Shown here piece after piece: positions 4,620-55,768 of a stretch of DNA of 64,000 nucleotides (the first letter of the stretch is position 1; each line of letters opens with the position of its first letter). Below the pieces are notes generated by a model that worked only from the letters and a program-made list of their open reading frames with translations, searched no databases and was not told where the DNA came from. A program made the position numbers and the translations under genes. The stretch is from positions 62,001 through 126,000 of the IMG/VR virus record IMGVR_UViG_3300033984_000473; one strand, 5' to 3'.

Positions 4620-4635
4620 TGTACACAAATGTGTA
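4620..4635. repeat. TGTACACAAWTGTGTA palindrome, copy 1 of 6
   Basis: Other copies at 14575, 14734, 27858, 28264, 55749. Confidence 0.7.
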
Positions 4636-4693
4636 GGACGGAGTCTACTCTTTCACTTGACGTGACCCGTTGCTCTTTCAACACTACAAATAT
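4621..4693 (-). ncRNA. AGTAGACTCC-family element, copy 2
   Basis: Core at 4640-4650 on the minus strand behind a TATATTTG promoter. Confidence 0.6.
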
Positions 4694-4740
4694 AGAAAAT
4701 AAAATCCACACTACCTAATATAATGTGGATTTTTTTCAAT

Positions 4741-4920
4741 TTATTTTAGGCTTGTATCGAATAAGCATTTAAACCGATACCACATAGTTGTAAACCTAAC
4801 TATGTTAAGGTTTTTGGTTGCAAAGGTTTTGATGTTTCTTTGGTATCTTAAAATGTCATAATAGCAAGGTATGATTGTAACGCTACCAATAGTAAGTCCG
4901 AATAGTTTCCAATTGTTCAT
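4741..4920 (-). CDS. small hypothetical protein (59 aa, absent from ORF track)
   Basis: MNNWKLFGLTIG...; translated by hand. Confidence 0.5.
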   Translation of the reverse strand: MNNWKLFGLTIGSVTIIPCYYDILRYQRNIKTFATKNLNIVRFTTMWYRFKCLFDTSLK

Positions 4921-4925
4921 ATTTT

Positions 4926-5072
4926 CTATCTTTTTTTACGTTCTAATTTACGTCTTTCACGTCTCAATTCTTTACCACTTTTTGGTATTTCTAATTTGTC
5001 TGGGTGTTGAGCGGGATTAGTAATGTTATATGTTGGATAATTTTCAAATGGGCTTTTACCTTCATTTCTCAT
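4926..5072 (-). CDS. small basic protein (48 aa, absent from ORF track)
   Basis: MRNEGKSPF...ELRRERRKLERKKR; own promoter. Confidence 0.6.
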   Translation of the reverse strand: MRNEGKSPFENYPTYNITNPAQHPDKLEIPKSGKELRRERRKLERKKR

Positions 5073-5145
5073 AGTGTATGTCTTTTAATTAAAAAACAAA
5101 GATAAGGATAAGTTTTCACTTATCCAAATCTTTTTGTATTTATTT

Positions 5146-5595
5146 TTAAACTTTTTTGAATATCAAAAGTCTTGCACTATCAAATACGTTTGAACATTTA
5201 CCGCATGAACTTGCTTTTTTTGGCGTTTTGAATTTTCTATGAACGTGTGAACATTTAGGACAAACCGCTTCAAGTGTACCCTTAACAATGATTGTGTTAT
5301 TTTCGGTATAACAACGATTTCCATCACAACCGATTGACAATGCTTTACGTTTCCACGTGCTATCGTGTCCGTGTCCGTGTCCAACCAATGCGTGAGCAAT
5401 TTCGTGTAGTATTGTATTTTTTACTCTTGCTTCGTCATTCAATAGTATCAAATGTTTTGATAAGCTGATACGTCTGTAAGTGTAGTTGCAACAGCCAAAT
5501 CTACGCTTTGCGTTATCTAAATTAAACATCCAATTATCAAGTCCGTGTTCTTTCATTAATTTTTCCCCTAATTCACTTGCTTTAACTAATTCCAT
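5146..5595 (-). CDS. SprT-like zinc metalloprotease
   Basis: HEIAHAL (HExxH), GHGHDSTWK, C-terminal CxxC pairs. Confidence 0.9.
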   Translation of the reverse strand: MELVKASELGEKLMKEHGLDNWMFNLDNAKRRFGCCNYTYRRISLSKHLILLNDEARVKNTILHEIAHALVGHGHGHDSTWKRKALSIGCDGNRCYTENNTIIVKGTLEAVCPKCSHVHRKFKTPKKASSCGKCSNVFDSARLLIFKKV

Positions 5596-5689
5596 AATTT
5601 GTGTTTTTAATTGGTTACTTATTCAACACTACAAATATAATGATAATAATCCACACTACCAAATATAATGTGGATTATTTTCAATTATT

Positions 5690-5953
5690 TTATAAATTAT
5701 CTGCAAGTTCACAAAGTTGATGTGGTGTGAGTACGCTATAACAATAGGAATAGCCTTGATTATCGAGTATTGAATCGTTTACCAATTCATCGAGCCATCT
5801 ACTACCAACGAGGTTAAACGCTAATTCATCGGGAACTTTAATACAAGGTTGCCCCGTGTGTTTGCTTTTCTTTTTTGATTTCCTTGCTTTAAGGATAAGA
5901 CGCATTTCAATCTTATTGATAAACGTTTCGAGTTGTTGAGTTTTCGTTGTCAT
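5690..5953 (-). CDS. hypothetical protein
   Basis: ORF track; start at MTTK. Confidence 0.65.
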   Translation of the reverse strand: MTTKTQQLETFINKIEMRLILKARKSKKKSKHTGQPCIKVPDELAFNLVGSRWLDELVNDSILDNQGYSYCYSVLTPHQLCELADNL

Positions 5954-5955
5954 AA

Positions 5956-6078
5956 TTATACGCATCTATGGTTGCTCCAGTATCTACGTTGTTGTCCACA
6001 TCGTGAGGCACAACTTTGGCATAATAACCAAACAGAAAATAATACGATTGCTATTGCATAAGGTCTAAATGATTTCAT
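5956..6078 (-). CDS. small putative lipoprotein (40 aa, absent from ORF track)
   Basis: MKSFRPYAIAIVLFSVWLLCQSC...; own promoter. Confidence 0.55.
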   Translation of the reverse strand: MKSFRPYAIAIVLFSVWLLCQSCASRCGQQRRYWSNHRCV

Positions 6079-6117
6079 AATAAGTGTTTTAATTGATTAG
6101 AGTACAAATATAGTGAA

Positions 6118-6315
6118 TTAGTTTGACACTACCAAATTTTCATCTACTTTTTTTGCGTCAAGTATTAAAATAATTCCACACAAAGTGCCGAACCCTAAAA
6201 ACGTAAATAAACTACACATTAATTGGTCATTGGTTTCTGATACGAATATACCGATAAAGCCTAATATTTGACAAAAAAGTGTGATAAGAACAAAGATAAG
6301 ATTTAATTTTTTCAT
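6118..6315 (-). CDS. small membrane protein
   Basis: Two hydrophobic segments; own promoter. Confidence 0.7.
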   Translation of the reverse strand: MKKLNLIFVLITLFCQILGFIGIFVSETNDQLMCSLFTFLGFGTLCGIILILDAKKVDENLVVSN

Positions 6316-6404
6316 TGTGTTTGTTTTAATTGATTAGAGTACAAATATAGGTATTAGTTTTGACATATCCTAATTTATTTGCAATTATTTTTCGTGTGTG
6401 TTGG

Positions 6405-6485
6405 CTGCTGACGTATGTGCGTGTTGGAGTCTACTCTTTTGATATTCCCATATCAACCCGTTACTCTTTCAACACTACAAATATA
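6405..6485 (-). ncRNA. AGTAGACTCC-family element, copy 3
   Basis: Core 6426-6436; hairpin replaced by TTGATAT(GGGA)ATATCAA. Confidence 0.6.
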
Positions 6486-6526
6486 AGAAAAAGAAATGAC
6501 ACTACCAAACGATAGTGCCATTATTT

Positions 6527-6712
6527 TTAAATTAATTTCATTTCAAATCCGTAATGACAAAAGCCAGTGATATTTGAAATTTCGTCTGAAACAAAATCAT
6601 CAATGTCTTGTTCTTCTACGATGTCGCTTGGCACTTCGATTTCAAATTCAACAGGTAAGTCTACTACTTCTCCGTCTGTATCGAATTTAACATTTGTAAC
6701 GATTGCTTTCAT
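6527..6712 (-). CDS. hypothetical acidic protein
   Basis: Own promoter. Confidence 0.75.
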   Translation of the reverse strand: MKAIVTNVKFDTDGEVVDLPVEFEIEVPSDIVEEQDIDDFVSDEISNITGFCHYGFEMKLI

Positions 6713-6797
6713 AATGCTAGTATTAATTGATTAGAGTACAAATATAAGATAAAAAATCCACACTACCTAATATAATGTGGATTAATTTTAATTTATT

Positions 6798-7061
6798 TTA
6801 GTCAACTATTCCTATCAATAATTTGTCTGTGTAACGTCTACCTTTATTCAAGTCGTGTGCTATTCCGACAAGTACGCCATACAACGTATCTTTTATAGGC
6901 AAATCGGGATAGTCCATTTGTAACATTTCGATTGTGGTTTCTGCAACGTACTTGCACGTATCTTTATTTCCATAACCCCAATTCTCGCAATACCCAACCC
7001 TACGAATAAGGTCTGCATAAGATATAGGATAATAACCATTTTGAATTTTTGACTTTGCCAT
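6798..7061 (-). CDS. hypothetical protein
   Basis: Own promoter. Confidence 0.75.
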   Translation of the reverse strand: MAKSKIQNGYYPISYADLIRRVGYCENWGYGNKDTCKYVAETTIEMLQMDYPDLPIKDTLYGVLVGIAHDLNKGRRYTDKLLIGIVD

Positions 7062-7140
7062 AGTGTGTTTTGATTAGAGTACAAATATAGGTAAAAAAAA
7101 ATAACCTACCAAATATTTGATAGGTTATTTTTAATTTATT

Positions 7141-7428
7141 TTATTCTTCCCAAAACATTATCGTTCCAGCATCGTTCCATTCTGCCCACCAGCCGTGTTT
7201 TCTCAATAGCTTCATAAACTCGTTGTGAACTCCGAACTCGTATTTTGTGTAGTTTTCGGTGTAGTAACTGAATAGGTGCAACCCATCTTTTGCTTCGTCT
7301 CCGTTCTCTCCAGAACTCCAAATTCCGCCTTTAGAACCATTGAACTCCTCGGTTGTTCTCATAAACAAATTTGGATACTTTGCTTCGATTGCTTTCATCA
7401 TTGCTTTTCTTGTACTTGCCATAATCAT
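7141..7428 (-). CDS. hypothetical protein
   Basis: Own promoter. Confidence 0.8.
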   Translation of the reverse strand: MIMASTRKAMMKAIEAKYPNLFMRTTEEFNGSKGGIWSSGENGDEAKDGLHLFSYYTENYTKYEFGVHNEFMKLLRKHGWWAEWNDAGTIMFWEE

Positions 7429-7519
7429 AGTGTATTGGTGGTTGCTTCATTGCAACAGTACAAATATAGGTATAATAATCCACACTACCAAATGTAATGT
7501 GAATTATTTTCAATTATTT

Positions 7520-7702
7520 TTAAACTTTTTTTCGTAGTTTCAAATCTTTGATTACCTTTGCAACCATATCTTGCACTTCAAACTCGCTTTGATTATCAGT
7601 ATCGGTGCAATCGGGAACGTACCCCAATTCGATTAGTTTGTTGGTAATTGTGATACCAATTTCTTGTCGTTCATCTCGGTCTAACTTTCTTGTCTTAGCC
7701 AT
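7520..7702 (-). CDS. hypothetical protein
   Basis: Own promoter. Confidence 0.75.
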   Translation of the reverse strand: MAKTRKLDRDERQEIGITITNKLIELGYVPDCTDTDNQSEFEVQDMVAKVIKDLKLRKKV

Positions 7703-7777
7703 TGTGTATGTTTTAATTGATTAGAGTACAAAGATAAGGATAAGTTTTCACTTATCCAAATCTTTTACCAATTATTT

Positions 7778-7978
7778 TTAGTCTTTCTCAAAAGATTTTA
7801 CCCAAAAGATAGGTAGGTCTCCGTATTCTTGTTTGAATTGTACAACCCCTTTTTCTTGTGCGTCTTTGTCGCTGGTCGCTTGGATTGTAAGTCCATACTT
7901 TTGGTGGTCATCGCCTTGTTCTCTGCCATAGTGGTCGTTAGGGTCGATAGACATAATTGTAACGTGATAACTTTTCAT
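7778..7978 (-). CDS. hypothetical protein
   Basis: Start corrected to MKSY, downstream of the promoter. Confidence 0.75.
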   Translation of the reverse strand: MKSYHVTIMSIDPNDHYGREQGDDHQKYGLTIQATSDKDAQEKGVVQFKQEYGDLPIFWVKSFEKD

Positions 7979-8070
7979 AAGATAGTGTGTTAATTGATTA
8001 GAGTACAAATATAGAACATTCTTTTTTAATATCCTAATGAATTTCATTTTTTTTTAAACTTTTTTTACCT

Positions 8071-8135
8071 TATCTTTGTAGTGTTGAAAGGGTCACGACA
8101 AGTGAAAGAGTAGACTCCGACACGTCTATATGCGA
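8071..8135 (+). ncRNA. AGTAGACTCC-family element, copy 4
   Basis: TATCTTTG 8071-8078; core 8108-8118. Confidence 0.6.
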
Positions 8136-8221
8136 ACTGCTCCCGACAAGGCACAAAAAAAGAGGGACACAACTCCCTCTTTCCCCACGTTAATTGCTTA
8201 ACGTTTCACCAATTAAATATA

Positions 8222-8416
8222 TTATTCCATTCCGTATTTATTACATTTTTTCTTTGTCTTAAACTCAAATGTGGGTGCTAACATTCCACCCCAAAAGATA
8301 AAACAAACTACAAACCCTTTAAAAAACATTTCCCAAGTTGATGGCATACCACCAAATGCACTTGTTAATGATGCGAAAAATATAACTACTAATAATACTG
8401 ATAAATTCTTTGACAT
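8222..8416 (-). CDS. small membrane protein
   Basis: Two hydrophobic segments; start corrected. Confidence 0.7.
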   Translation of the reverse strand: MSKNLSVLLVVIFFASLTSAFGGMPSTWEMFFKGFVVCFIFWGGMLAPTFEFKTKKKCNKYGME

Positions 8417-8472
8417 AATGTTTGTGTTTTGATTAGAGTACAAATATAAGATTTTAATTTGACATATCCTAA

Positions 8473-8631
8473 TTAATATCTAAAAACTTTCGGTCTTGTT
8501 CTATTTTTTAAACCCACTTCTGAACACTTCATACATTGTTGTTTTCCATCATTGTGTTTTACAATAACAATATCAAAACCTTGATGTAATACTTCAACTT
8601 GTGTTTGAGTTCCAACGATTATAACTTTCAT
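8473..8631 (-). CDS. small hypothetical protein (52 aa, absent from ORF track)
   Basis: MKVIIVGTQTQVEV...; preceded by a structured leader. Confidence 0.55.
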   Translation of the reverse strand: MKVIIVGTQTQVEVLHQGFDIVIVKHNDGKQQCMKCSEVGLKNRTRPKVFRY

Positions 8632-8651
8632 AGTGTGTTTTTTGATTAAGT

Positions 8652-8715
8652 AATAACCGAGTGGGGATTGCTAGTCGGTTGTTAGTCCGTGCGTTCCAAC
8701 TCTACCTCGATTATT
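8652..8715 (-). promoter_or_regulatory. structured 5' leader
   Basis: AATAATCGAG/CTCGGTTATT 10-bp closing stem right after the promoter. Confidence 0.45.
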
Positions 8716-8764
8716 ACACTACAAATATAAGACTTTAATTTGATATAACCTAATTTATTTTGAA

Positions 8765-9064
8765 TTATTTTCCAATTCTTTTTCTGTGCATTGAACTTGG
8801 GTGCGTGTTGTCTGCTTTGCTTTCAAAACAATATGTAGGCATACCGCTCATTGAGTGTAAATCTGTCAATATGATTATGTACCCCTCGGTCAAACATCGT
8901 TTAAGATTTTCATTCATTTTAAACATTTTGATTTGTGGGAACTTTTTAGCAAATGCTTGTAAGTCGTCATCATTTTCAACTATGTATCTTTCAATTTCAA
9001 CTTCTCCCGATTGTGGACTTGTATAAACGCCCCATTTTAAATCTTTGTGTTTTACTACTAACAT
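8765..9064 (-). CDS. hypothetical protein
   Basis: Own promoter. Confidence 0.7.
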   Translation of the reverse strand: MLVVKHKDLKWGVYTSPQSGEVEIERYIVENDDDLQAFAKKFPQIKMFKMNENLKRCLTEGYIIILTDLHSMSGMPTYCFESKADNTHPSSMHRKRIGK

Positions 9065-9142
9065 AATCTATGTGTTTTGATTAGAGTACAAATATAGGTA
9101 AAAAAAATAAGACTACCAAATAAATGATAGTCTTATTTTAAA

Positions 9143-9385
9143 TTATTCTAAACTTGTTCCCTCAAAATCATACTCATATTGAATATGTGGATATTGTTTA
9201 TCCAAATATTTGTGTAGTCTATCTACACTTCTAAATCTTTTAACAATTTCTTTATCTTGCCACGAATCTAAAAATACATATTCTTTGATTATAGCAACAT
9301 AACCACCTTTGAATATTTTACCTTTATCGGGTATTGCCAAAACATTATCGGTCAAAACATTTTCTCTTAATATAAACTCTCTCAT
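9143..9385 (-). CDS. hypothetical protein
   Basis: Own promoter. Confidence 0.75.
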   Translation of the reverse strand: MREFILRENVLTDNVLAIPDKGKIFKGGYVAIIKEYVFLDSWQDKEIVKRFRSVDRLHKYLDKQYPHIQYEYDFEGTSLE

Positions 9386-9471
9386 TGTCTATTGTTTTAA
9401 TTGATTAGAGTACAAATATAGGTAAAAAAAATAAGACTACCAAATAAATGATAGTCTTATTTTAATTATTT

Positions 9472-10026
9472 TTATTCTGCCGCCCACCCAAAGAAAACGA
9501 ACTCGCCCGAACTTTCCGTAGTTGCTGACTTGTAGCGTATTGTTGCCACCGAACTACCACCACCTACAATACGTTTTTCTAAATGAATACGTGTAGTTTT
9601 TTTGGTTTTTTCAGTATGACTTCTTGCAATCTTAACCGCATCGCCTTTGGTTTTTTTCGCCCCTACTTCGTTGTCGTCCCAATCGGTTACAACATAAACA
9701 AGTTCCCATTTTTTTGTACCTTTGGTTACAATGTGGTCAACTTGGCTCTTAACCTTATTCTCATTGGCTTTAGGTTCTTTGGTACAAATACCCCACGCAT
9801 CGTCCCATTTTGAGCAATGATTTTCGATAGCATCATTGATAAATTCAGATAGTGATTTGCCACTTGCTTTGAATTTTTTAGTAGCATCAAAAACGCCACG
9901 TGTTGTACTAATTGTGCCATTGTAGGTATCGTTGCCGTATTCCTCAATTGCATCGCTTACTGCCTCTTTGTATGCCTCTTGCATACTAAATCCTTTTTGT
10001 CTTTGACTGAAACTTGATGCTCCCAT
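9472..10026 (-). CDS. hypothetical phage protein
   Basis: 184 aa; own promoter. Confidence 0.85.
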   Translation of the reverse strand: MGASSFSQRQKGFSMQEAYKEAVSDAIEEYGNDTYNGTISTTRGVFDATKKFKASGKSLSEFINDAIENHCSKWDDAWGICTKEPKANENKVKSQVDHIVTKGTKKWELVYVVTDWDDNEVGAKKTKGDAVKIARSHTEKTKKTTRIHLEKRIVGGGSSVATIRYKSATTESSGEFVFFGWAAE

Positions 10027-10105
10027 AATATGTGTGTGTTTTAATTAGAGTACAAATATAAGAATAAAAAATAAGACTACCAAATAAATGATAGTCTTTT
10101 TTTAA

Positions 10106-10423
10106 TTATTTTATTTCGTCTAGGATTGCTTGGCATTCCTCGTTAAACCTTTCAGAATTTCCATATAGGTAATCGTTGGTGCTGATAGAGGATAAGATAA
10201 ACTCATCGTCAATACTCATCAATTCCTTTAAATCGTCTTTCATTAATTGCTTATCTGACGTTTTACATTCACTTATCCACATAAAAAGATTGTCGATAAG
10301 AGTTTCTCGGTCTTCAATTCTATATCCTACAAGTTCCTCGTTGAATATTTCGCTAGGTATTCTATTACTATTGATATAGAAATTATCCCCTACTTCCTCG
10401 ATAACATATTTTGCTACGCTCAT
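10106..10423 (-). CDS. hypothetical acidic protein
   Basis: Start corrected to MSVAK. Confidence 0.75.
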   Translation of the reverse strand: MSVAKYVIEEVGDNFYINSNRIPSEIFNEELVGYRIEDRETLIDNLFMWISECKTSDKQLMKDDLKELMSIDDEFILSSISTNDYLYGNSERFNEECQAILDEIK

Positions 10424-10483
10424 AATGTGTGTTAATTGATTAGAGTACAAATATAGTGATAATAATTGACACTACCAAATTTT

Positions 10484-10804
10484 TTAGTATCTTTTTTCGC
10501 TCCTAATAAATTCGCCTACCAAAGTAAACTGATTATCTGACAAACTGCTATATTGTGCGGTAAGATAGCTTTTATACTTGTCATAGATTGATATTGACGT
10601 ATGTGGGTTAATTGATGCTACAAAGATATAACTCATACATATATCCTCGTAAGAGCTTCTAATTTTACTACTACCAAAACGACCATTTAAAATATCTCGT
10701 ATAAGTGGGTGATTTTCGTGTAGTTTAATTTCATTCAACTCAAATGGTAATGTTGGTAAAACTCTCGGTTTAAGTGTTTCTTTTGCAAATGTGTGTAAGC
10801 TCAT
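10484..10804 (-). CDS. hypothetical protein
   Basis: Own promoter. Confidence 0.7.
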   Translation of the reverse strand: MSLHTFAKETLKPRVLPTLPFELNEIKLHENHPLIRDILNGRFGSSKIRSSYEDICMSYIFVASINPHTSISIYDKYKSYLTAQYSSLSDNQFTLVGEFIRSEKRY

Positions 10805-10904
10805 AATATGTGTGTTTTAATTGATAGTACAAATATAGGATAAAGTTTTTTAATATCCTAATAAATTTGTAGTTATTTTATTTGTTTATTAATTTTCTTT
10901 TGTC

Positions 10905-10975
10905 TATCTTTGTAGTGTTGAAAGAGCAACGGGTCATGACAAATGAAAGAGTAGACTCCGACACGCCTATATGCC
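10905..10975 (+). ncRNA. AGTAGACTCC-family element, copy 5
   Basis: Core 10949-10959; hairpin TCAT(GACAA)ATGA. Confidence 0.6.
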
Positions 10976-11000
10976 ACGTGAACCCCAAACAAAAAAAACC

Positions 11001-11198
11001 CTAGTAAGGGTTTCTTGGTGTGTGTGTTTTGCCTGTGGTTATATCCACCCACTTTTGTTTTGATTCTTTTTTGGCTAGAGCTTCAACGCTTTTGATTTTG
11101 TCTTCTCCAGCTTGGGTTGCTTCAGCGTGTGTGTGACCGCATTTGATAGCGAAGTTGTAAGCTGATTTTCTTAAGATTTCTTGGACTCTTGCATTCAT
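11001..11198 (-). CDS. hypothetical protein
   Basis: Own promoter. Confidence 0.75.
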   Translation of the reverse strand: MNARVQEILRKSAYNFAIKCGHTHAEATQAGEDKIKSVEALAKKESKQKWVDITTGKTHTPRNPY

Positions 11199-11307
11199 AG
11201 TGTTTGTGTTTTAATTGGTTACTCATTTTCAACAGTACAAATATAGGTATAAAAAAATAACCTACCAAATAAATGATAGGTTATTTTTAAATTATTTTCA
11301 ATTTTTT

Positions 11308-11826
11308 TTAGATATTCAGCGTGAGCCCCAGTGTTCCTTGATTAAACGTATCGTAACCTAAATTGACATTTAACTTGTCGCTTAACTTATACCCGACATA
11401 TCCACCATATAAAAACTCATAATTTGTGGGCGACTTGCTTTCGTGTACCACGCTTATCGGTGTAGTTGTTACATACCTATTATAATTCGCATCGTTGCAT
11501 ATTCCACCCCTCAACCCTAAAATGATTTTATTTATTTTCTTGCCGACCAATAGATAAAATGCTTGGTTCTTGGTTCGATAACTATCGACATACGTGTAGT
11601 TATTTGCACCGACATTGCTTTGTGCTTCATTCCCTACATACCGACTATACCCAACTCCTACTATGGTGTTGTTTGTGGTTTTGGTTAATTCAGCACCGAG
11701 TGTGTTTGCCGTTCCGTACTGAAACGTAACATCAGTTGAATTTTGCTTGACCTTTGAACATTGTGCGTAGCTTGTTGCCGAGAACAAAAACGCCAATAAC
11801 ATAAACATTCCGAGAATTTTCTTCAT
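11308..11826 (-). CDS. putative outer-membrane beta-barrel protein
   Basis: Signal peptide (..ATSYA), alternating aromatic/hydrophobic strands (VGVGYSRY, YGGYVGYKL, LNVNLGY). Confidence 0.6.
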   Translation of the reverse strand: MKKILGMFMLLAFLFSATSYAQCSKVKQNSTDVTFQYGTANTLGAELTKTTNNTIVGVGYSRYVGNEAQSNVGANNYTYVDSYRTKNQAFYLLVGKKINKIILGLRGGICNDANYNRYVTTTPISVVHESKSPTNYEFLYGGYVGYKLSDKLNVNLGYDTFNQGTLGLTLNI

Positions 11827-11904
11827 AACTTAAAAAGATTTAATTATTAATGATTAGAGAACAAAGGTAGTTTTTTTAATTGATACTACCAAACAATTTA
11901 ACAT

Positions 11905-12234
11905 TTATTTTATTGCTAATAATTCAGCCAATTTGTCTGTGGCTTTTGAACTATGACCGCCAATGTGCCAATTTGTGATTTTGGTTTTTGCTAAACCCCT
12001 TGCACCATTGTAATTTTTACCATTTTTCCAATTGTATATGGTTGCAATTGTGCCATCTTCAAATTCGATTTCCCATTCAGCATCTACCTTGTAGCCATCG
12101 CCATCAGTAGGTTGTCCAAACATTGCTTTTAATTTTGCATAGGTTGTTTGGATTTCGCCTTGCAAGTGAGTACCACAAGCATCAATACTTTTTGTGTTGT
12201 GAGTGTGAAACGGAATTGTGATTTCTTTTGACAT
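11905..12234 (-). CDS. hypothetical phage protein
   Basis: Own promoter. Confidence 0.8.
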   Translation of the reverse strand: MSKEITIPFHTHNTKSIDACGTHLQGEIQTTYAKLKAMFGQPTDGDGYKVDAEWEIEFEDGTIATIYNWKNGKNYNGARGLAKTKITNWHIGGHSSKATDKLAELLAIK

Positions 12235-12305
12235 ATTTTCTATGTGTTAATTGATTAGAGTACAAATATAAGAATTAGTTTTGACATATCCTAATAATTT
12301 TCAAT

Positions 12306-12467
12306 TTATTTTTTTGCTAATAAAGTACCAAATGCGTATCCACCGATACCACACATTAAATAAGATATTAATACCATTGGTGTATTATAAAAAAATTGTA
12401 TTGATAATATTCCAAAGATTACTAATAACGATAATAGAGCAAGTGTTTTCTTTCCAAGGTTTGACAT
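12306..12467 (-). CDS. small two-helix membrane protein (53 aa, absent from ORF track)
   Basis: MSNLGKKTLALLSLLVIFGILSIQFF...; own promoter. Confidence 0.55.
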   Translation of the reverse strand: MSNLGKKTLALLSLLVIFGILSIQFFYNTPMVLISYLMCGIGGYAFGTLLAKK

Positions 12468-12531
12468 AATATGTGTGTTAATTGATTAGAGTACAAATAT
12501 AGTGATTAGTTTTGATATAACCTAATTTATT

Positions 12532-12900
12532 TTAATTTATTTTTGAATAATACCAATTAATTATTTTGTAGATAGTTTCAGCATTAACCAATAAATTAAT
12601 CATTGGCTTATCGTGTCCGTACTTGGCACTTTCCCATTCTTTGGTTTTGTGTTGATTATAGATTTCAGCCAACAAAGTTTCTTTCGGATTGTCATTCATT
12701 AACAATTCAACGTTAAACATATCAGTTTTGTCGCTTGGTGTAATGTATAGACATTTTGCCCAATCAAATAGGTTTCTGTTTGTCTTAATGATTACTACCA
12801 TTTCTTTGATAATATCAGCATCATCAAGTGTAGGTGTAAGTTTTTTAGTTACCTTTGCAACTTTTTTATTCCAACCTAAAATATTTGATAATTGTTCCAT
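12532..12900 (-). CDS. hypothetical protein
   Basis: Own promoter. Confidence 0.75.
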   Translation of the reverse strand: MEQLSNILGWNKKVAKVTKKLTPTLDDADIIKEMVVIIKTNRNLFDWAKCLYITPSDKTDMFNVELLMNDNPKETLLAEIYNQHKTKEWESAKYGHDKPMINLLVNAETIYKIINWYYSKIN

Positions 12901-12954
12901 GATGTGTGTTTTAATTAGAGTACAAATATAGTGATAATAATTTACACTACCAAA

Positions 12955-13158
12955 TTAATAACTAACTAATTTGCAATATTCTCTTAATTCAGCCAAAGGG
13001 ATTCGAGTACCCCTAAATGAATAGTAGCCTTGACGCTCAAAACGTTTTGCCCATTCAATAAACCCTTGTTCAGCTTTTTCAGCACTTGCAAAATCTTTGT
13101 CCATATACATTCCAATTCCATCGGGACTTAAAATATCGTAACGTTTTTTCTTTGACAT
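12955..13158 (-). CDS. hypothetical protein
   Basis: Own promoter. Confidence 0.75.
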   Translation of the reverse strand: MSKKKRYDILSPDGIGMYMDKDFASAEKAEQGFIEWAKRFERQGYYSFRGTRIPLAELREYCKLVSY

Positions 13159-13210
13159 AATATGTGTGTTTTAATTAGAGTACAAATATAAGGATTAGTT
13201 TTGATATATC

Positions 13211-13366
13211 CTAATAATTCTCTAGGTTTTTTTTAAATTCTTTTCGGCTGTACGTTTTCTTGCTTGTGTGTACTCTATGACGTGAGAAATTCATTCCCAA
13301 TTCAATTTGTAATTCACGTTCAATTTTACGTGCATTTTTGATAATTTGTGTTTGTGTAAGTTTCAT
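13211..13366 (-). CDS. small basic protein (51 aa, absent from ORF track)
   Basis: MKLTQTQIIKNARKIERELQIELG...HTSKKTYSRK. Confidence 0.65.
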   Translation of the reverse strand: MKLTQTQIIKNARKIERELQIELGMNFSRHRVHTSKKTYSRKEFKKNLENY

Positions 13367-13465
13367 TATATGTGTCATTTAATTAGAGTACAAATATAGA
13401 ATAAAAAAATTACAATTCCTAATAAAAAAGTGATTATTTTATTAGGTTATTAAAAAACTTTTTTC

Positions 13466-13540
13466 TATCTTTGTAGTGTTGAAAGAGCAACGGGTCACGG
13501 CAAGTGAGAGAGTAGACTCCGTCACACCCTATACTCACTT
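13466..13540 (+). ncRNA. AGTAGACTCC-family element, copy 6
   Basis: Core 13510-13520. Confidence 0.6.
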
Positions 13541-13594
13541 CAAGCCAAAAACAAAAAAAACCCTAATAGGGTTTTTAGTTCCAGATAGTTTTAC

Positions 13595-13921
13595 CTATCT
13601 TTGCATTCTGCCAAGTTGCTCACACTCGTACAAAAGCTCCGACTGGAACAAATCGCTGTCCAAAGCAATTGGTTCGCTAAAAACCAGCTCATGCTCGACA
13701 TACGTGTAACGTGCGTACTCGTTCGACTGCTTAGCCAAAAGCGTAGCAATCGCTTTCAAGCATTCAGCCTCAGCGTACATAAAGCTGTCGCTGTCGACTC
13801 GAAGCGTAAACACTTGACCACCTTTCGGTTTCCAAGCCTGTGGGCACTCGCCTTGACCGTCCCAGCTGTGTGCTCCGTAGTTCTCGTGATATTGTGCCGT
13901 AATGTTAAGTAATGTATTCAT
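13595..13921 (-). CDS. hypothetical phage protein
   Basis: Own promoter; higher GC than neighbours. Confidence 0.75.
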   Translation of the reverse strand: MNTLLNITAQYHENYGAHSWDGQGECPQAWKPKGGQVFTLRVDSDSFMYAEAECLKAIATLLAKQSNEYARYTYVEHELVFSEPIALDSDLFQSELLYECEQLGRMQR

Positions 13922-14099
13922 AATATGTGTGTGTTAATTGGTTACTAATTCAACACTGCAAAGATAGACAAATTTTTGATACTACCAAACTTTTTAGCAA
14001 TTATTTTTAAATTATTTTTTTTTTATTTTTTTACCTAAAAAATTTGCATATATCAAATATTATCGTATCTTTGCACTCTAATCAATTAATACACACATT

Positions 14100-14342
14100 A
14101 TGAGTACTCAAAGAAGTTTGAATGTTATTGCAAGTGAAATCAGAAGCGACTGGAAATCAGTAAACTACGGTGCAAAGCCTTACTTAGATGCAATGGGCTG
14201 TTTAACTAATGTATCGGATAATTTCGGTATGGATACTGGAAAGTCAATTGTGCTGTACTTCCTGTCGAATGCTAGTACATGGTGGGGCGAAACTGCCAAG
14301 CGTGTCAAAGCTGAATTAAAGAAAATGGTGGGGCTGAAATAG
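14100..14342 (+). CDS. hypothetical phage protein
   Basis: Plus-strand promoter at 14066-14073 and terminator AGCCC..GGGCT. Confidence 0.8.
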   Translation: MSTQRSLNVIASEIRSDWKSVNYGAKPYLDAMGCLTNVSDNFGMDTGKSIVLYFLSNASTWWGETAKRVKAELKKMVGLK

Positions 14343-14376
14343 CCCCTTTTTTTTATCTTATCTAAAAAAATTTATC

Positions 14377-14574
14377 ATGGCAAAATTTACCTGTGAAGAA
14401 TGTCTTCAAGAAAAAGATAGCTTCCACGAATCACTGGAAAAAAATAATATGTGTGATGACTGCTTCAACGAGCTATCACAAGCGGACGAGGGCTACAACC
14501 AATGGTGCGGTTGCTGTCAAATGTTTTCTCATATAACTGATAGCAATCCATACGGTACGTGTCAATGTAGTTAA
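14377..14574 (+). CDS. small Cys-rich (Zn-binding?) protein
   Basis: CEEC, CDDC, CGCC, CQC. Confidence 0.55.
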   Translation: MAKFTCEECLQEKDSFHESLEKNNMCDDCFNELSQADEGYNQWCGCCQMFSHITDSNPYGTCQCS

Positions 14575-14875
14575 TGTACACTTATGTGTAATATACCCAG
14601 CCCTAGACTAGCCTCTAGGGTTTTCCTGTTATATATCCTGTTCGCATAACACTACACAATCCGTAGTAGAACGCAAATCAAATATAGCTCATATAAGCCA
14701 CGTTCTCCCTGTGGGTGGCACTAGGCGACCCTATGTACACAAATGTGTATGTGTGGGGCTCTATACATGCGAAAAGGCCGCCTCATAAGAGACAGCCATT
14801 CGTTTTGAGGAACCACCCTCGTTTGTTTGCAAGCCATGCAACAATTTTCCGCTGGCCCATTGCTGGACCATTTTG

Positions 14876-15003
14876 TGTAAGAGACAGGGGTCGAACCTGT
14901 ACAAGAATCAAGCGGGCTACCCCTTTATTAAGGTTTTCGGGATTATGATTATTCCCTACTTATTATGCACAACCACTGCGTTTGCCAATTTCGCCACTCG
15001 AAC
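14876..15003 (-). tRNA. tRNA-like RNA with expanded anticodon region (128 nt)
   Basis: D-arm GCGAAATTGGCAAACGC, T-arm ACAGG-TTCGACC-CCTGT, imperfect acceptor, insert with two hairpins; no assignable anticodon. Confidence 0.55.
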
Positions 15004-15076
15004 ATGTCCACTTTATCAGATAGAGGCAAACTGGCTTTGTGCAATTAAGGGGGCACGATATGCTTACAACCACTTG

Positions 15077-15149
15077 TGGAACCGACAGGACTCGAACCTG
15101 TGACGTACTACGATGAAGCAGCTGCTCTAACCAACTGAGCTACAGAACC
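15077..15149 (-). tRNA. atypical tRNA-Met(CAT)-like / pseudo-tRNA
   Basis: Canonical D and T arms; 6-nt loop TTCATC; two T-T mismatches in acceptor. Confidence 0.6.
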
Positions 15150-15267
15150 ATTTGTTGATGACACAGTTATAACCTAATGCTCTTCACATTCGGTGGAGTG
15201 ACTTATGTGCTCCTTTCTCATCAACAGTACAAAGGTAGGAAATATAATTGACACTACCAAATGTTTT

Positions 15268-15546
15268 TTACTTTATTTTTCTATGTTCATCAATTTGTTC
15301 TGAAGCTATATCTGAATTGGCATAAAAGCTCATGTTATATACTGCCTGTGTTACTGGATGCAGCCTATGTCTGAAGCTGTGGATAACTTTATCCTTCTCC
15401 TTGAGGCTACCCATATATTGCCAAGCTTCTCCTTCGTTGAGAGCTTCTTTAGGATTTTCCAGCCCTTCGTTAACTGGATGTGTTGCCACCTTCTCCCACA
15501 TGGAAATCCATTCGGGGCTGTCTTCTTTTATTAGTAATAATTCCAT
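15268..15546 (-). CDS. hypothetical protein
   Basis: 92-aa ORF with promoter. Confidence 0.7.
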   Translation of the reverse strand: MELLLIKEDSPEWISMWEKVATHPVNEGLENPKEALNEGEAWQYMGSLKEKDKVIHSFRHRLHPVTQAVYNMSFYANSDIASEQIDEHRKIK

Positions 15547-15582
15547 AGTACAAAGATACTAATAAAAAAAGAAATATCCAAA

Positions 15583-15888
15583 TTAATTGGATATTCTTTT
15601 TTCAGTTTGAATTTGCTCGGCTTCCCACATTTCAGCCAACATAAGGATTTCTTCAAGAATGTCTTTGTCCAAGTCTTCGTAACTTATATAGTCTTCGTCA
15701 ACTACTGTTTCGTGAACATAGGTCAAAGCTGTTACTTTGTGTTCTCCAAACTCTTCTAACAACTGGTGCGTATCTTTGCCCAATGAAGCAATACAAGGAC
15801 TGCTATCGGCTTCAACATCGGCTGTGGTAAAACTACCAAACTTAACAATGATTTTGTTAATGTTTTTAATTACTGTTCTTTTTTGCAT
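15583..15888 (-). CDS. hypothetical acidic protein
   Basis: Own promoter. Confidence 0.75.
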   Translation of the reverse strand: MQKRTVIKNINKIIVKFGSFTTADVEADSSPCIASLGKDTHQLLEEFGEHKVTALTYVHETVVDEDYISYEDLDKDILEEILMLAEMWEAEQIQTEKRISN

Positions 15889-15947
15889 GACTACTGTGTT
15901 TTAATTAGAGTACAAATATAATGAATTAAATCTACACTACCAAACAA

Positions 15948-16181
15948 TTATCGAATTATTTTTAAATATAAATCAGTTCGTGTGTTACCACCATATCGGG
16001 GCATAAGGCTACCGTTTTTTCTCCAAGTGGCTACAACGTATCCACCGTGTAATGTTTCTTTGCCAACAACAGGGCATTTAACCAAACCACGAATAACATT
16101 ATCCAATGGCAACCAAGTTAAATCTTTGACAGCATATCCGTCAACCGTTTCAGTTATCTGTATTAATTGTTCTTTTTCCAT
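15948..16181 (-). CDS. hypothetical protein
   Basis: Own promoter. Confidence 0.7.
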   Translation of the reverse strand: MEKEQLIQITETVDGYAVKDLTWLPLDNVIRGLVKCPVVGKETLHGGYVVATWRKNGSLMPRYGGNTRTDLYLKIIR

Positions 16182-53722: not shown

Positions 53723-53724
53723 AC

Positions 53725-54078
53725 TTATACTTTTACTGCTCTTTCTTTAATCTCAATTAAAATTTCGTCATGCTTCGCCAATCGTTTATCGTTAGCCACC
53801 TTCAACGTTTTGATTGAGTTTCTAAGAGTATCACAAGTAGATGATAATATGATTACGTCTAACTTGTTAATTCTACGCTTTTCTAACAACGCTTGTAAGT
53901 ATTTCAACTTCTCGTGTGACTTATAGGTAGCACCCAATTTCGTTCCTTCTAAGTTATGGTAAAATTCAGAGAGTTCGCAGTCAATTTTGCTTTGGTCTAC
54001 TCTGGAAGCTTCTAATAATGCTTCAATGTTTTCGTACTCTTTAATAAAGTTGGTAACGATGGTAATTTGATTGCTCAT
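53725..54078 (-). CDS. coiled-coil hypothetical protein
   Basis: Own promoter. Confidence 0.7.
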   Translation of the reverse strand: MSNQITIVTNFIKEYENIEALLEASRVDQSKIDCELSEFYHNLEGTKLGATYKSHEKLKYLQALLEKRRINKLDVIILSSTCDTLRNSIKTLKVANDKRLAKHDEILIEIKERAVKV

Positions 54079-54142
54079 AATGGTAAGTGTTAATGATTAG
54101 AATGCAAAGGTAAGAATAATATTTGAATATACCAAATAAATC

Positions 54143-54544
54143 CTAGAAAAAATCTTCGTCAAATGGTTGATTTAATAAACGTTCTCTTTCTGTTATAAAT
54201 TCTTCTTTGGTAATTTCAACAAAATATCGGTCTTTACCAAGCATTATCTCTAACGCTGTTCGTCTAATATCGTTGGTATCTGAAAGCCAGTAATCTTGTC
54301 TACAATCTTTAGTAGGTACAAAATCAGTATAGAATTGCTTTCCTCTCTCAACTTCAAAGAGTAAAAAAGTGGTTGAGTATTTTACAAGAATACCAAATAG
54401 AATAACACCTCTAGCGAAAAAAGCACCATCATCATTTCTTTTGTAAAACTTATCTTGTGTTGGATATTTTAAGTTGATTGTTTCTCTAACTTCTTCAACA
54501 ATTGTTTTTTTAGCTCTTGTAAGTAATTGAATTTCTTTTACCAT
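54143..54544 (-). CDS. hypothetical protein
   Basis: Start corrected to MVKE. Confidence 0.65.
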   Translation of the reverse strand: MVKEIQLLTRAKKTIVEEVRETINLKYPTQDKFYKRNDDGAFFARGVILFGILVKYSTTFLLFEVERGKQFYTDFVPTKDCRQDYWLSDTNDIRRTALEIMLGKDRYFVEITKEEFITERERLLNQPFDEDFF

Positions 54545-54769
54545 TTTATTGTGTATTAAATTAAAAGACAAAGGTACATATAATATTTGAACCTACCAAA
54601 TAAAAAATGGTAAATTTTACTTGCATATTAAAAAAGTTTGTTATACCTTTGCAGAACTTACATAAAACTTGTAGTCTAACCAACTACAACCAAAGCCATG
54701 CGACCCAACACCAAATACGGTGATTGGGTTTACGTGTTGACTATTTTATTTTTTTAACTATATTTGTAT

Positions 54770-55219
54770 ATGACAAAAGAAGAAAAGTGTAAAATAGTTA
54801 TAGATAAAGGTTTTACCTACAACCCAGAAACTGGAATTATTTATGGTGTTAGAGGTGGTGTTTTAAAAAATATGGACGGTAGAGGATATTTCGAAATAAA
54901 CTTCAATTATGAAAAAAAGAGATATTATTTAAAAGGTCATATCTTTGCATGGTATTGGGTTAATAAGGAATGTGTTGAAGAAATAGACCATATAAATAGA
55001 ATACGTTCAGATAATAGAATCGATAATTTAAGAAGTGTGACTCGTGGTCAAAATATGTGGAACACTAAAGGTAAAGGTTTTTATTATCATAAAAATATAA
55101 AAAAATGGCACGTACAAATAACCGTAAATAATGTTAAAAAACACATTGGTTATTTTGATACTGAAGAAGAAGCTAATAAAATTTATAAACTAAATAAAAA
55201 TCTATATCATTTAATTTAA
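54770..55219 (+). CDS. HNH homing endonuclease (HNH_3 with AP2-like C-terminus)
   Basis: IDHINRIRSDNRIDNLR; KKWHVQITVNNVKKHIGYFDTEEEA. Confidence 0.9.
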   Translation: MTKEEKCKIVIDKGFTYNPETGIIYGVRGGVLKNMDGRGYFEINFNYEKKRYYLKGHIFAWYWVNKECVEEIDHINRIRSDNRIDNLRSVTRGQNMWNTKGKGFYYHKNIKKWHVQITVNNVKKHIGYFDTEEEANKIYKLNKNLYHLI

Positions 55220-55297
55220 GAAAATCGTTTATATCGGCAGTAATCACCGTTAACTAATAAAATGTTAAACTATGATAGAAAAAAAGATTCAGAAATA

Positions 55298-55325
55298 AAA
55301 AACCCCGAACAGTGTCGGGGTTAGT
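55298..55325. terminator. bidirectional terminator
   Basis: AACCCCGA-ACAGTG-TCGGGGTT between convergent genes. Confidence 0.65.
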
Positions 55326-55330
55326 GTGTA

Positions 55331-55696
55331 TTAGTTATAAGCACCAGGATTCTTAGTTACCTTACTAAGAGCGGCTGCTTCTTTGGGTGAAAGATGTCTA
55401 TCATTTCTACCGAAGATTTTCTGTGTGAATTTACCTCTCGCACTGGCATCTGTTGCTGAACCTAAGTTAGCGTCTTCAATGGCTTGAGAAATCTTAAGGG
55501 ATTTACCAGGACCAACTGCTTGTCTTATCTCAATGGTTTGAGTATCCACTTTCTTTTGTTCTTTTGGTGAAAGCTCACCATATTCTTTGCTAGTTTCCTC
55601 ATCTTCAGATTTAGGCTCTTGCGTATTTTTACTTTTCTCTGCCAAGCGTTTGAATAAGTTCTCTCTCAAAGCTTGTTTTATAAATGTTTTTATCAT
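55331..55696 (-). CDS. hypothetical protein
   Basis: N-terminus MIKTFIKQALRE. Confidence 0.75.
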   Translation of the reverse strand: MIKTFIKQALRENLFKRLAEKSKNTQEPKSEDEETSKEYGELSPKEQKKVDTQTIEIRQAVGPGKSLKISQAIEDANLGSATDASARGKFTQKIFGRNDRHLSPKEAAALSKVTKNPGAYN

Positions 55697-55748
55697 GACG
55701 TATTTCTTTTAATATAAATATCTAGTTTTTCAATAAAAGACAACCTCT

Positions 55749-55768
55749 ATGTACACAATTGTGTACAT
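55749..55768. repeat. perfect 20-bp palindrome ATGTACACAATTGTGTACAT
   Basis: Best copy of the six-member family. Confidence 0.75.

What the first reader, a model, noticed from the sequence alone, without database searches (positions are those of the whole stretch)
4620..55768. Recurrent palindrome TGTACACAATTGTGTACA at six dispersed sites
Seen: 4620, 14575, 14734, 27858, 28264 and 55749 (the last a perfect 20-mer), often with CTA upstream or TAG downstream, all at gene boundaries or in gene-free stretches; copy 1 abuts an AGTAGACTCC element. Inference: binding site for a dimeric phage protein (repressor, nucleoid organiser, replication block or packaging factor).
Basis: partly seen in the sequence, partly recalled or inferred. 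Interest (0 to 1): 0.6.

Follow-up and report, generated by a model that had tools for sequence, protein, structure and literature searches.

The report
Conserved boundary palindrome in Bacteroidota jumbo phages
A 20-22 bp palindrome occurs five or six times in this large uncultured phage, at the borders of its blocks of early, middle and late genes, and recurs at the same places in dozens of related phages, so it is a real control signal, but the factor that reads it is not identified.

Summary
Five sites share an invariant core ACACAAWTGTGT (0.11 expected by chance). A sixth, at 14575, is weak. There is no further copy in the 233-kb record.

The window belongs to an uncultured jumbo phage whose promoters are of the Bacteroidota type (TTTG / TAnnTTTG).

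The same motif (consensus tATGTACACAAWTGTGTACATa) occurs 3-6 times per genome in about 35 related IMG/VR contigs, at syntenic places:
- a pair 160-660 bp apart at the head of a dense array of early promoters, next to host-type parS sites and a GP88-family gene;
- further sites inside or at the end of that array, often where transcription converges;
- one site a few bases after the sigma-factor operon and just upstream of a late-type promoter of a conserved 100-135-aa protein ("family A").

Sequence rather than pairing is conserved, mismatches show no wobble bias on the transcribed strand, and T-runs are not enriched. I therefore favour a double-stranded DNA site for a symmetric phage protein that acts as a boundary or operator element (about 0.5).

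Family A, predicted to carry an XRE-like helix-turn-helix domain (weak scores), is the leading candidate binder, but this is unproven. The motif has the TGTACA-N6-TGTACA geometry of YefM operators but fails membership in that family.

The parts
4620..4637 (.). Palindrome copy 1 (3 mismatches, all in the right outer part). It lies at the far end of the early-promoter block, between the 3' end of a small RNA-like unit on the - strand and the terminator of + gene 4269-4598.
14575..14592 (.). Weak copy (5 mismatches, two in the core). It lies directly after the stop of + ORF 14377-14574 and before an intrinsic-terminator-like hairpin.
   Evidence: statistically marginal
14734..14751 (.). Palindrome copy (3 mismatches, outer bases). 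It lies downstream of the - strand tRNA unit (promoter at 15237) and faces the + unit that starts at promoter 14066, so this is a convergent junction inside the early block.
27857..27874 (.). Palindrome, right-hand end of the 850-bp non-coding control region. It is reached by + strand promoters at 27162, 27300 and 27405 after two parS-like sites. First member of the conserved pair.
28264..28281 (.). Palindrome, second member of the pair. It lies 5 nt after the stop of - gene 28287-28688 (last gene under TACCTTTG-type promoters) and 25 nt before the ATG of ORF82.
55749..55768 (.). Perfect 20-bp palindrome. It lies 4 nt after the stop of ORF114 (sigma operon) and 27-28 nt upstream of the late-type promoter of the family A gene.
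55714..55722 (-). GATATTTAT box of a third promoter-like class (TTTT-N15-(G/C)ATATTTAT, about 20 nt before the ATG). It is conserved upstream of every family A gene examined.
55331..55696 (-). Family A protein (121 aa): N-terminal helix, acidic/basic linker and a C-terminal domain of about 75 aa predicted as XRE/Cro-like HTH. Candidate reader of the palindrome.
55772..56116 (-). ORF114, a conserved small gene between the sigma gene and the palindrome (7 loci). Function unknown.
56387..57271 (-). Phage RpoD-like sigma factor (regions 1.2, 2 and 4), itself behind a TACCTTTG-type promoter at 57315.
27990..28238 (-). ORF82 enclosed by the pair. It is weakly similar to the ORF in the same position in G001 (pairwise E 8e-7). 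No family assignment.
27503..27556 (.). Two perfect parS-like palindromes TGTTCCACGTGGAACA (27503-27518 and 27541-27556) in the non-coding control region. Canonical parS-like sites lie beside the pair in at least 6 related phages.
26205..27023 (-). GP88-family (PF17338) gene, first gene of the early array. It neighbours the palindrome pair in 11 loci.
4100..27400 (-). Block of about 45 TTTG/TTAG-N20-TAT(A/C)TTTG promoters, nearly one per small gene. It is bounded by copy 1 and by the pair.

Best explanation
The motif (consensus tATGTACACAAWTGTGTACATa) is a conserved cis-element of a clade of uncultured large phages of Bacteroidota. I propose that a two-fold symmetric, phage-encoded protein reads it as double-stranded DNA, and that it works as a boundary or operator element. 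Its positions are shown: at the head, inside and at the end of the array of early host-type promoters, and between the sigma-factor operon and the first late-type promoter. A bound protein there would stop or modulate RNA polymerase arriving from either side, which is inferred. This would keep the temporal classes and converging units apart. At the family A gene the same protein would occupy about -45 to -62 of that gene's promoter. The most likely reader is family A itself, a new 100-135-aa family with a predicted XRE/Cro-like HTH domain; this is inferred with weak support.
For: Reality and selection:
- 5 sites against 0.11 expected.
- Exact 18-mers occur in 34 IMG/VR contigs, often as pairs.
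- There are 3-6 sites per genome in G001-G006, and the reversed-pattern controls are 0-1.
- The inner 14 bp are invariant, and unsearched flanks extend the dyad.

Synteny:
- The order sigma gene, then small ORF, then palindrome, then family A holds in 14-15 loci.
- The pair lies beside GP88 in 11 loci.
- The palindrome lies upstream of family A in 17 of 28 loci that were fetched by protein, not by motif.

Boundary position:
- TATATTTG/TATCTTTG promoters are confined to the block between copy 1 and the pair, and TACCTTTG promoters lie outside it.
- G001, G003 and G004 have the same layout.
- Convergent junctions hold 11 of 53 sites, against 50 of 809 intergenic spaces.
- Many sites lie 4-17 nt after a stop codon.

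DNA-level rather than RNA-level reading:
- Mismatches give wobble pairs equally on the sense and antisense strand (12 vs 13), and many variants break pairing.
- T-runs are not enriched (15% vs 11%).

Phage rather than host reader:
- Bacterial genomes show scattered single hits and no Bacteroidota regulon.

Candidate binder:
- The family A C-terminal domain gives hit lists made almost entirely of lambda-repressor-like/XRE HTH domains in three libraries (Z 3.8-5.5; TM 0.52-0.56 by target).
- Its most conserved residues lie on the putative recognition helix.
Against: - No binding is shown.
- The fold matches for family A are below the tool's own reliability marks.
- The homodimer test gave no verdict.
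- 11 of 28 family A genes lack the palindrome upstream, so autoregulation is not universal.
- The window's own family A has a divergent 'recognition helix' but the same DNA motif.
- Co-occurrence of family A and the motif is uninformative, because the whole clade shares both.
- The centre is ATTT on the sense strand 24 times against AAAT 11 times. This hints at strand-specific (RNA-level) reading, but it is not corrected for shared ancestry.
- In the window, four sites are followed within 5-25 nt by terminator-like hairpins, so they are probably transcribed into 3' UTRs.
- A roadblock function is pure inference.
Confidence: 0.5

Rival explanations
1. RNA-level element. The palindrome is transcribed into the 3' ends of transcripts as an 8-10-bp hairpin. 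A sequence-specific RNA-binding or processing factor recognises it and causes factor-dependent termination, RNase cleavage or 3'-end stabilisation.
For: Sites often lie 4-17 nt after stop codons. In the window they sit just upstream of terminator-like hairpins at 4620, 14575, 14734 and 27857. In some relatives the palindrome is embedded in a canonical terminator: L041 has a stem extension plus a T-run, and L162 is flanked by A5 and T7. Where relatives lack the palindrome after the sigma gene, an ordinary terminator occupies that place (L136, L137). The centre shows a sense-strand bias of ATTT 24 vs AAAT 11.
Against: The sequence, not the pairing, is conserved. There is no strand bias of wobble-compatible changes (12 vs 13), and variants frequently break pairs. 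T-runs are not enriched. Terminator adjacency is not significant (6/79 vs 3.5%). The symmetric consensus extends into the flanks on both sides.
Confidence: 0.2
2. Site for a host protein, such as a Bacteroidota nucleoid-associated protein, regulator or topoisomerase, that the phages exploit at junctions of converging transcription.
For: The phages also carry host-type parS sites beside the pair but no ParB gene, so they do use host DNA-binding proteins in this region. Sites are enriched at convergent junctions.
Against: The exact-match scan of 185,579 species genomes gave only scattered single hits in Bacteroidota (about 9 of 69 loci) and no multi-site regulon. The known Bacteroidetes LexA motifs are different. 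The scan was exact-match only, so degenerate host sites would be missed.
Confidence: 0.1
3. Marker of physical genome structure: borders of a long terminal repeat holding the early genes, a stop signal for stepwise DNA entry, or a packaging recognition site.
For: The early host-takeover-like block is bracketed by the sites. From memory, not tested here: T5 has an injection-stop region rich in inverted repeats beside its pre-early genes, and Twort-like phages have short inverted repeats at the borders of long terminal repeats that hold early genes.
Against: In G001 and G003 the early array continues past the third site. The sigma-adjacent site lies far from the array. No read data could be obtained to look for a coverage step or read ends. 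The sites are not at the contig ends of genomes flagged as complete.
Confidence: 0.1
4. Operator of a Phd/YefM-type toxin-antitoxin module (paired TGTACA hexamers 12 bp apart).
For: The perfect copy is exactly TGTACA-N6-TGTACA, the published YefM-YoeB operator geometry. In bacterial hits of the same 18-mer, Phd/YefM genes (4 loci), a Phd-like 83-aa gene (7 loci, E 0.011) and BrnT genes follow within 7-61 nt.
Against: There is no PF02604 match in G000, in the complete G001, or in G002 and G003. In the phages the 'spacer' is the most conserved part and the outer hexamer bases vary, which is the reverse of YefM operators. The small ORFs downstream of the sites show no Phd signal.
Confidence: 0.03
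5. Recombination sites of an invertase or resolvase, with pairs flanking a 160-660-bp invertible segment as in Bacteroidota invertons.
For: The pair spacing is typical of invertons. The central dinucleotide is either symmetric (AT) or asymmetric (AA/TT).
Against: Conservation is highest at the centre and lowest at the outer arms, unlike hix/gix sites (from memory). Gene order and orientation around the pairs is the same in all relatives examined. I did not search for a recombinase gene.
Confidence: 0.04

Closest known systems
YefM-YoeB / Axe-Txe operator (paired TGTACA palindromes, centre-to-centre 12 bp; Kedzierska et al. 2007, PMC1802561)
   Same: The perfect copy has the identical hexamer geometry. 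The same 18-mer precedes Phd/YefM-type genes in several bacterial loci.
   Different: The phages encode no Phd/YefM protein. The spacer is invariant and the hexamer ends vary. The sites lie at unit borders, not within 80 bp upstream of an antitoxin gene.
Operators of small XRE-type controllers (restriction-modification C-proteins with C-boxes; anti-CRISPR-associated Aca repressors)
   Same: A small HTH protein whose gene follows a palindromic site. The structural neighbours of family A include C.Csp231I, C.Esp1396I, Aca1, Aca7 and Aca10. The logic would be to curb very strong early promoters.
   Different: Fold similarity is weak (Z up to 5.5). The site lies upstream of the promoter rather than over it, is missing at 11 of 28 family A genes, and further copies sit at distant junctions. 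Binding is untested.
Protein roadblocks and boundary elements of transcription (for example LacI-type roadblocks; from general knowledge)
   Same: A symmetric site that would act on polymerases from both directions. It is placed at convergent junctions and between temporal classes.
   Different: No phage system of dispersed, dedicated roadblock sites delimiting temporal classes is known to me. The function here is inferred from position only.
Repetitive extragenic palindromes (REP/BIME) of enterobacteria (from memory)
   Same: Extragenic palindromes just after stop codons, frequent between converging genes, transcribed into 3' UTRs.
   Different: REPs number in the hundreds, are imperfect and are lineage-specific. 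Here there are 3-6 near-perfect copies per genome at syntenic places across a wide clade.
Dispersed centromere sites of plasmid-prophage N15 (sopC inverted repeats; from memory)
   Same: A few identical palindromes are scattered over a phage genome, and parS-type sites are their neighbours here.
   Different: No partition genes (ParA, ParB/SopB) were found in the record. The motif is unlike parS.

Membership tests
YefM/Phd-type toxin-antitoxin operator | Two TGTACA hexamers with 6-bp spacer (12 bp centre to centre) | tested here: inconclusive
   Exact only at 55750. The other window sites have a degenerate outer hexamer (TGTAGG, TGTATG, CGTACA, TGTGCA). In G004-G006 the outer T/A is replaced (AGTACA...TGTACT).
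YefM/Phd-type toxin-antitoxin operator | Lies within about 80 bp upstream of a phd/yefM antitoxin gene that it autoregulates | tested here: not met
   No PF02604 match at E<=10 in G000, and none at E<=1 in G001 (100% complete), G002 and G003. The downstream small ORFs show no Phd signal.
YefM/Phd-type toxin-antitoxin operator | Hexamers conserved, spacer sequence diverse | tested here: not met
   The inner ACACAAWTGTGT, which includes the spacer, is invariant in 59 unique phage sites, while the outer bases vary. The paper describes diverse spacers.
Intrinsic (factor-independent) terminator | G+C-rich hairpin directly followed by a T-run | tested here: not met
   The stem has only 2-3 G:C pairs. 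TTTT occurs within 13 nt in 15% of flanks against 11% background. Only a few relatives (L041, L162) have that context.
Structured RNA element | Pairing kept through compensatory or wobble changes on the transcribed strand | tested here: not met
   Wobble-compatible changes number 12 on the sense and 13 on the antisense strand, with 48 and 47 true mismatches. No Rfam family matches.
parS / ParB centromere site | 16-bp TGTTNCACGTGAAACA-like palindrome with a cognate ParB | tested here: not met
   The motif differs from parS at most positions. Genuine parS-like sites lie nearby as separate elements. There is no ParB_N match in G000.
Bacteroidetes SOS (LexA-like) box | GGA-N5-TCC or CTAA-N5-TTAG palindrome | tested here: not met
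   The motifs reported in PMC8565304 differ from this one.
Operator of an XRE/Cro-type HTH dimer | Two-fold symmetric duplex site of about 14-22 bp | tested here: met
   Symmetrised logo of 59 sites: a 20-22-bp dyad.
Operator of an XRE/Cro-type HTH dimer | A cognate HTH protein that binds it, usually encoded nearby | tested here: inconclusive
   The family A gene adjoins the site in 17 of 28 loci. Its C-terminal domain resembles XRE HTH domains only weakly. The dimer test gave no verdict. Protein-DNA binding is not testable with these tools.
Operator of an XRE/Cro-type HTH dimer | Overlaps or abuts the regulated promoter | tested here: inconclusive
   At family A the site ends 26-37 nt before the GATATTTAT box, with variable spacing. 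In L021/L146 it ends 16 nt before the next ATG. The other sites are not next to recognisable promoters.

The most novel reading that the evidence does not exclude
The palindrome and the family A protein form a previously undescribed insulator system of Bacteroidota jumbo phages. In this reading a late-expressed XRE-like dimer, made under the phage's own sigma factor, clamps 3-6 identical sites. These sites fence off the host-takeover gene array and the sigma operon, and the bound protein blocks RNA polymerase from both directions. The genome would thus be partitioned into temporal domains beside a host-ParB-loading (parS) region.
Probability: 0.2. Interest if true: 0.7.

Novelty: new member of a known kind. 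Interest (0 to 1): 0.45.

Why it matters
The phages that carry this element are abundant, uncultured, 90-370-kb viruses of Bacteroidota, and their gene regulation is unknown. The motif, together with the three promoter classes mapped here, gives a first sketch of their transcription programme:
- a block of about 45 host-type early promoters;
- a second host-type class;
- a class likely served by the phage sigma factor;
- a handful of identical palindromes exactly at the seams.

If the sites are protein roadblocks or operators, they offer a compact, portable insulator-regulator pair for Bacteroidota, a phylum with few genetic tools. They would also assign a function to a family of at least 287 metagenomic protein clusters that is still unannotated. 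If they are merely 3'-end hairpins, the finding is ordinary.

Tried and rejected
1. Chance was rejected.
2. A literature search for the motif strings found no relevant paper.
3. YefM/Phd operator: the geometry matches, but no Phd/YefM gene is present and the conservation pattern is inverted.
4. Bacteroidetes LexA box: the motifs differ.
5. ParB/parS: the motif is unlike parS and no ParB is encoded.
6. Intrinsic terminator: there is no T-run enrichment and only weak adjacency to terminators.
7. RNA structure: there is no strand-biased wobble and no Rfam hit.
8. A Pfam scan of 136 window ORFs found no HTH or other DNA-binding family except the sigma factor and the HNH endonuclease scanned earlier.
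9. The family A homodimer prediction gave no verdict; it counts neither for nor against.
10. Foldseek against the PDB gave nothing significant for family A. The feature search of the protein atlas gave nothing usable.
11. ORF82 and the other small ORFs between pairs have no family assignment.
12. GP88 has no solved relative. It is widespread as an early gene of unknown function in pelagiphages, mycobacteriophages and jumbo phages.
13. Searches for close cultured relatives in the phage collection found none by DNA, and only distant sigma and GP88 hits.
15. The profile scan for family A loci failed with the broad alignment and worked with a narrower one.
16. GC skew shows no inflection at the pair, so there is no support for an origin or terminus.

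Full report
**Observation**

The 18-mer with up to three mismatches occurs at 4620, 14734, 27857, 28264 and 55750. Shuffles give 0.11 expected, and none of 100 reaches five. All five keep ACACAAWTGTGT, and the differences lie in the outer bases. 55749-55768 is a perfect 20-mer.

The sixth site (14575) has five mismatches, two of them in the core. At that stringency eight unrelated places in the record match as well. Only its position supports it: it lies 159 bp from 14734 and directly after a stop codon.

The window is bases 62,001-126,000 of a 232,931-bp IMG/VR virus record judged 64% complete. The rest of the record holds no further strong copy.

**What the genome is**

G+C is about 33% and nearly all genes lie on the - strand. 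The intergenic spaces carry a repeated element. Read on the gene strand, it is TTTG(G)-N20-TAnnTTTG followed by a conserved A-rich leader. This is the -33/-7 promoter type of Bacteroidota, so the host is very probably a member of that phylum.

The promoter-like sites fall into three classes.
- TATATTTG/TATCTTTG boxes: 43 have an exact -33 element, and 37 of these lie in genome 60-90 kb. They fill window 4.1-27.4 kb at about one per small gene.
- TACCTTTG boxes: 32 of 37 lie outside that block. They serve window 28-62 kb and the rest of the record.
- TTTT-N15-(G/C)ATATTTAT, about 20 nt before an ATG: this class is scattered over the whole record.

The phage encodes an RpoD-like sigma factor at 56387-57271. 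No close cultured relative exists in the phage collection.

**Where the palindromes sit in the window**

- 28264 lies 5 nt after the last gene of the TACCTTTG region. 27857 closes an 850-bp non-coding region that holds two perfect parS-like sites. That region also holds divergent promoters, and three of them (27162, 27300, 27405, + strand) point at the palindrome. The pair thus marks the seam between the two host-type promoter classes and encloses only ORF82.
- 14575 and 14734 lie where a + strand unit (promoter 14066, two small ORFs) meets a - strand unit that carries a tRNA and a sub-threshold tRNA-like sequence.
- 4620 lies at the far end of the early block. It comes after a small promoter-plus-conserved-core unit and faces the terminator of a + gene.
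- 55750 lies 4 nt after the stop of ORF114 in the sigma operon. It is 27-28 nt upstream of the GATATTTAT box of the next gene, family A.

**Relatives**

An exact-pattern scan of IMG/VR returned 44 loci in 34 contigs of 4-369 kb with G+C of 25-39%. Many hold two to four copies, and pairs 160-610 bp apart are frequent.

Clustering the neighbouring ORFs showed two conserved settings.
- Sigma gene, sometimes an ORF114 homologue, then the palindrome, then family A: 14-15 loci.
- A GP88-family gene about 0.7-1.4 kb from the pair: 11 loci.

Whole-record scans gave 3-4 sites in G001-G003 and 3-5 in the complete 340-362-kb genomes G004-G006. In G004-G006 the core GTACACAAWTGTGTAC persists while the outermost bases change.

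Promoter maps of G001, G003 and G004 repeat the layout. The pair stands at the head of the dense early array, often with parS-like sites beside it, and further sites follow 5-15 kb into the array.

A logo of 59 unique sites is invariant over the inner 14 bp. It also shows A/T at the positions just outside every pattern I searched with (79%), which gives a dyad of 20-22 bp.

**DNA or RNA, terminator or binding site**

Evidence against a plain terminator or a structure-only RNA hairpin:
- Wobble-compatible substitutions are as frequent on the antisense strand as on the sense strand (13 vs 12), and true mismatches are common.
- T-runs are not enriched next to the sites.
- My simple terminator finder sees only a non-significant excess nearby.
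- Sequence identity is kept across phages whose proteins are 20-40% identical.

Evidence that transcription matters:
- Sites are enriched at convergent junctions (11 of 53 against 50 of 809).
- Many lie 4-17 nt after a stop codon.
- A few relatives embed the palindrome in a canonical terminator.
- Relatives that lack it after the sigma gene have an ordinary terminator there.
- The asymmetric centre is ATTT on the sense strand in 24 cases and AAAT in 11. This count is not corrected for shared ancestry.

I read this as a sequence-specific element that acts on transcription at unit borders. It is most simply a duplex site for a symmetric protein that hinders polymerase from either side. A sequence-specific RNA reader remains a serious rival.

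**Who reads it**

The motif has the TGTACA-N6-TGTACA geometry of YefM-YoeB operators. In bacterial genomes the same 18-mer does precede Phd/YefM-type, Phd-like and BrnT genes. The phages, however, encode no Phd/YefM protein, and their conservation pattern is the reverse of YefM operators. Membership therefore fails.

Other candidates also fail:
- Bacteroidetes LexA boxes are different.
- No ParB is encoded.
- None of 136 window ORFs carries a Pfam DNA-binding domain apart from sigma and an HNH endonuclease.
- The host genomes show no regulon of such sites.

Family A remains. It is a family of at least 287 clusters, all of them unannotated metagenomic proteins. Two AlphaFold models (pLDDT 75 and 78) give an N-terminal helix, a disordered charged linker and a C-terminal bundle of about 75 residues. 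The structural neighbours of that bundle in three libraries are almost all lambda-repressor-like/XRE domains: C-proteins, Aca repressors, HipB, HigA, SinR and POU-specific domains. The scores are modest (Z 3.8-5.5; TM 0.52-0.56 by target), and Foldseek found nothing significant. The best-conserved residues, including the one invariant arginine, lie on the helix that would be the recognition helix.

- 11 of 28 family A genes have no palindrome upstream.
- The dimer test gave no verdict.
- Co-occurrence is uninformative within one clade.

**Verdict**

The position data point to a boundary or roadblock-operator role rather than replication or packaging.

The element is a new member of a familiar kind (phage regulatory palindromes) in a poorly known phage group. 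The reads tools could not be used.

Noticed in passing
window 4100-27400 (- strand mainly), and 28300-62100: There are two classes of Bacteroidota-type promoters (-33 TTTG/TTAG, -7 TAnnTTTG). About 45 TAT(A/C)TTTG promoters, each followed by TACTCTAATCAATTAAAACA-like leaders, stand before nearly every small gene of a 23-kb block. TACCTTTG promoters serve the genes beyond it. Relatives show the same split.
   Followed up: partly
window 55714-55722 and about 35 places in the whole record: A third promoter-like class, TTTT-N15-(G/C)ATATTTAT(A), lies about 20 nt before start codons and is spread over the whole genome. It may be the class served by the phage's own RpoD-like sigma factor.
   Followed up: partly
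window 27503-27518 and 27541-27556; L010, L018, L052, L123, L019, L033: Perfect or canonical host-type parS palindromes (TGTTCCACGTGGAACA / TGTTTCACGTGAAACA) sit beside the palindrome pair in several related phages. No ParB gene is present in this record, which suggests recruitment of host ParB.
   Followed up: partly
window 4159-4279, 8063-8183, 10904-11024, 13465-13585, 24428-24548, 26035-26155, 27170-27290 (+); 6361-6481, 4575-4695 (-): Nine copies of a small unit occur: an early-type promoter, a conserved core of about 60 nt with invariant AGTAGACTCC, no ORF, and often a terminator. Most are antisense to the gene array. There is no Rfam match and only a weak consensus fold. Copy 1 of the palindrome replaces the variable 3' part of one of them.
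   Followed up: partly
L017 1963-2379, L032 3364-3783, L033 11798-12217, L046 2248-2676; L012, L027, L031, L034, L039, L051; window 54764-55219: HNH endonuclease genes lie within about 600 bp of a palindrome in at least 11 related genomes. In four of them a variant palindrome lies inside the HNH reading frame (read as MYTNVYI). This may be a hot spot for mobile endonuclease genes or a functional link.
   Followed up: partly
L053, L065, L075, L080, L098, L106, L109, L116, L083, L088: A nearly identical element of about 4.2-4.4 kb appears in assemblies of unrelated organisms (Bacteroides, Collinsella, Segatella, Helicobacter, Geodermatophilus, an archaeon). It carries the 18-mer 61 nt upstream of an 83-aa Phd-like gene. 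It may be a small plasmid or a contaminant.
   Followed up: no
L068, L072, L076, L085, L114 (one MAG labelled Verrucomicrobiota, G+C about 0.6): Five contigs of one high-G+C MAG each carry the exact 18-mer with similar flanks (…aaaac/gtttt…). This is a separate repeated element in that genome.
   Followed up: no
window 34860-63631 (one ORF; by synteny with L026/L028 probably 57340-57783): The phage encodes a full SmpB homologue (Pfam E 1.5e-52). In relatives it lies just upstream of the sigma gene. ARAGORN found no tmRNA in the window.
   Followed up: no
window 58529-59188, 15077-15149, 14876-15003: A tRNA cluster holds two 99-nt matches (possible introns or long arms). ARAGORN could not assign the anticodon of one tRNA, and there is one 128-nt sub-threshold tRNA-like sequence.
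   Followed up: no
window 30720-31496, 5146-5595: An ADP-ribosylglycohydrolase-like gene lies in the middle region, and a SprT-like metalloprotease is the last gene of the early block. Both are possible host-takeover functions.
   Followed up: no
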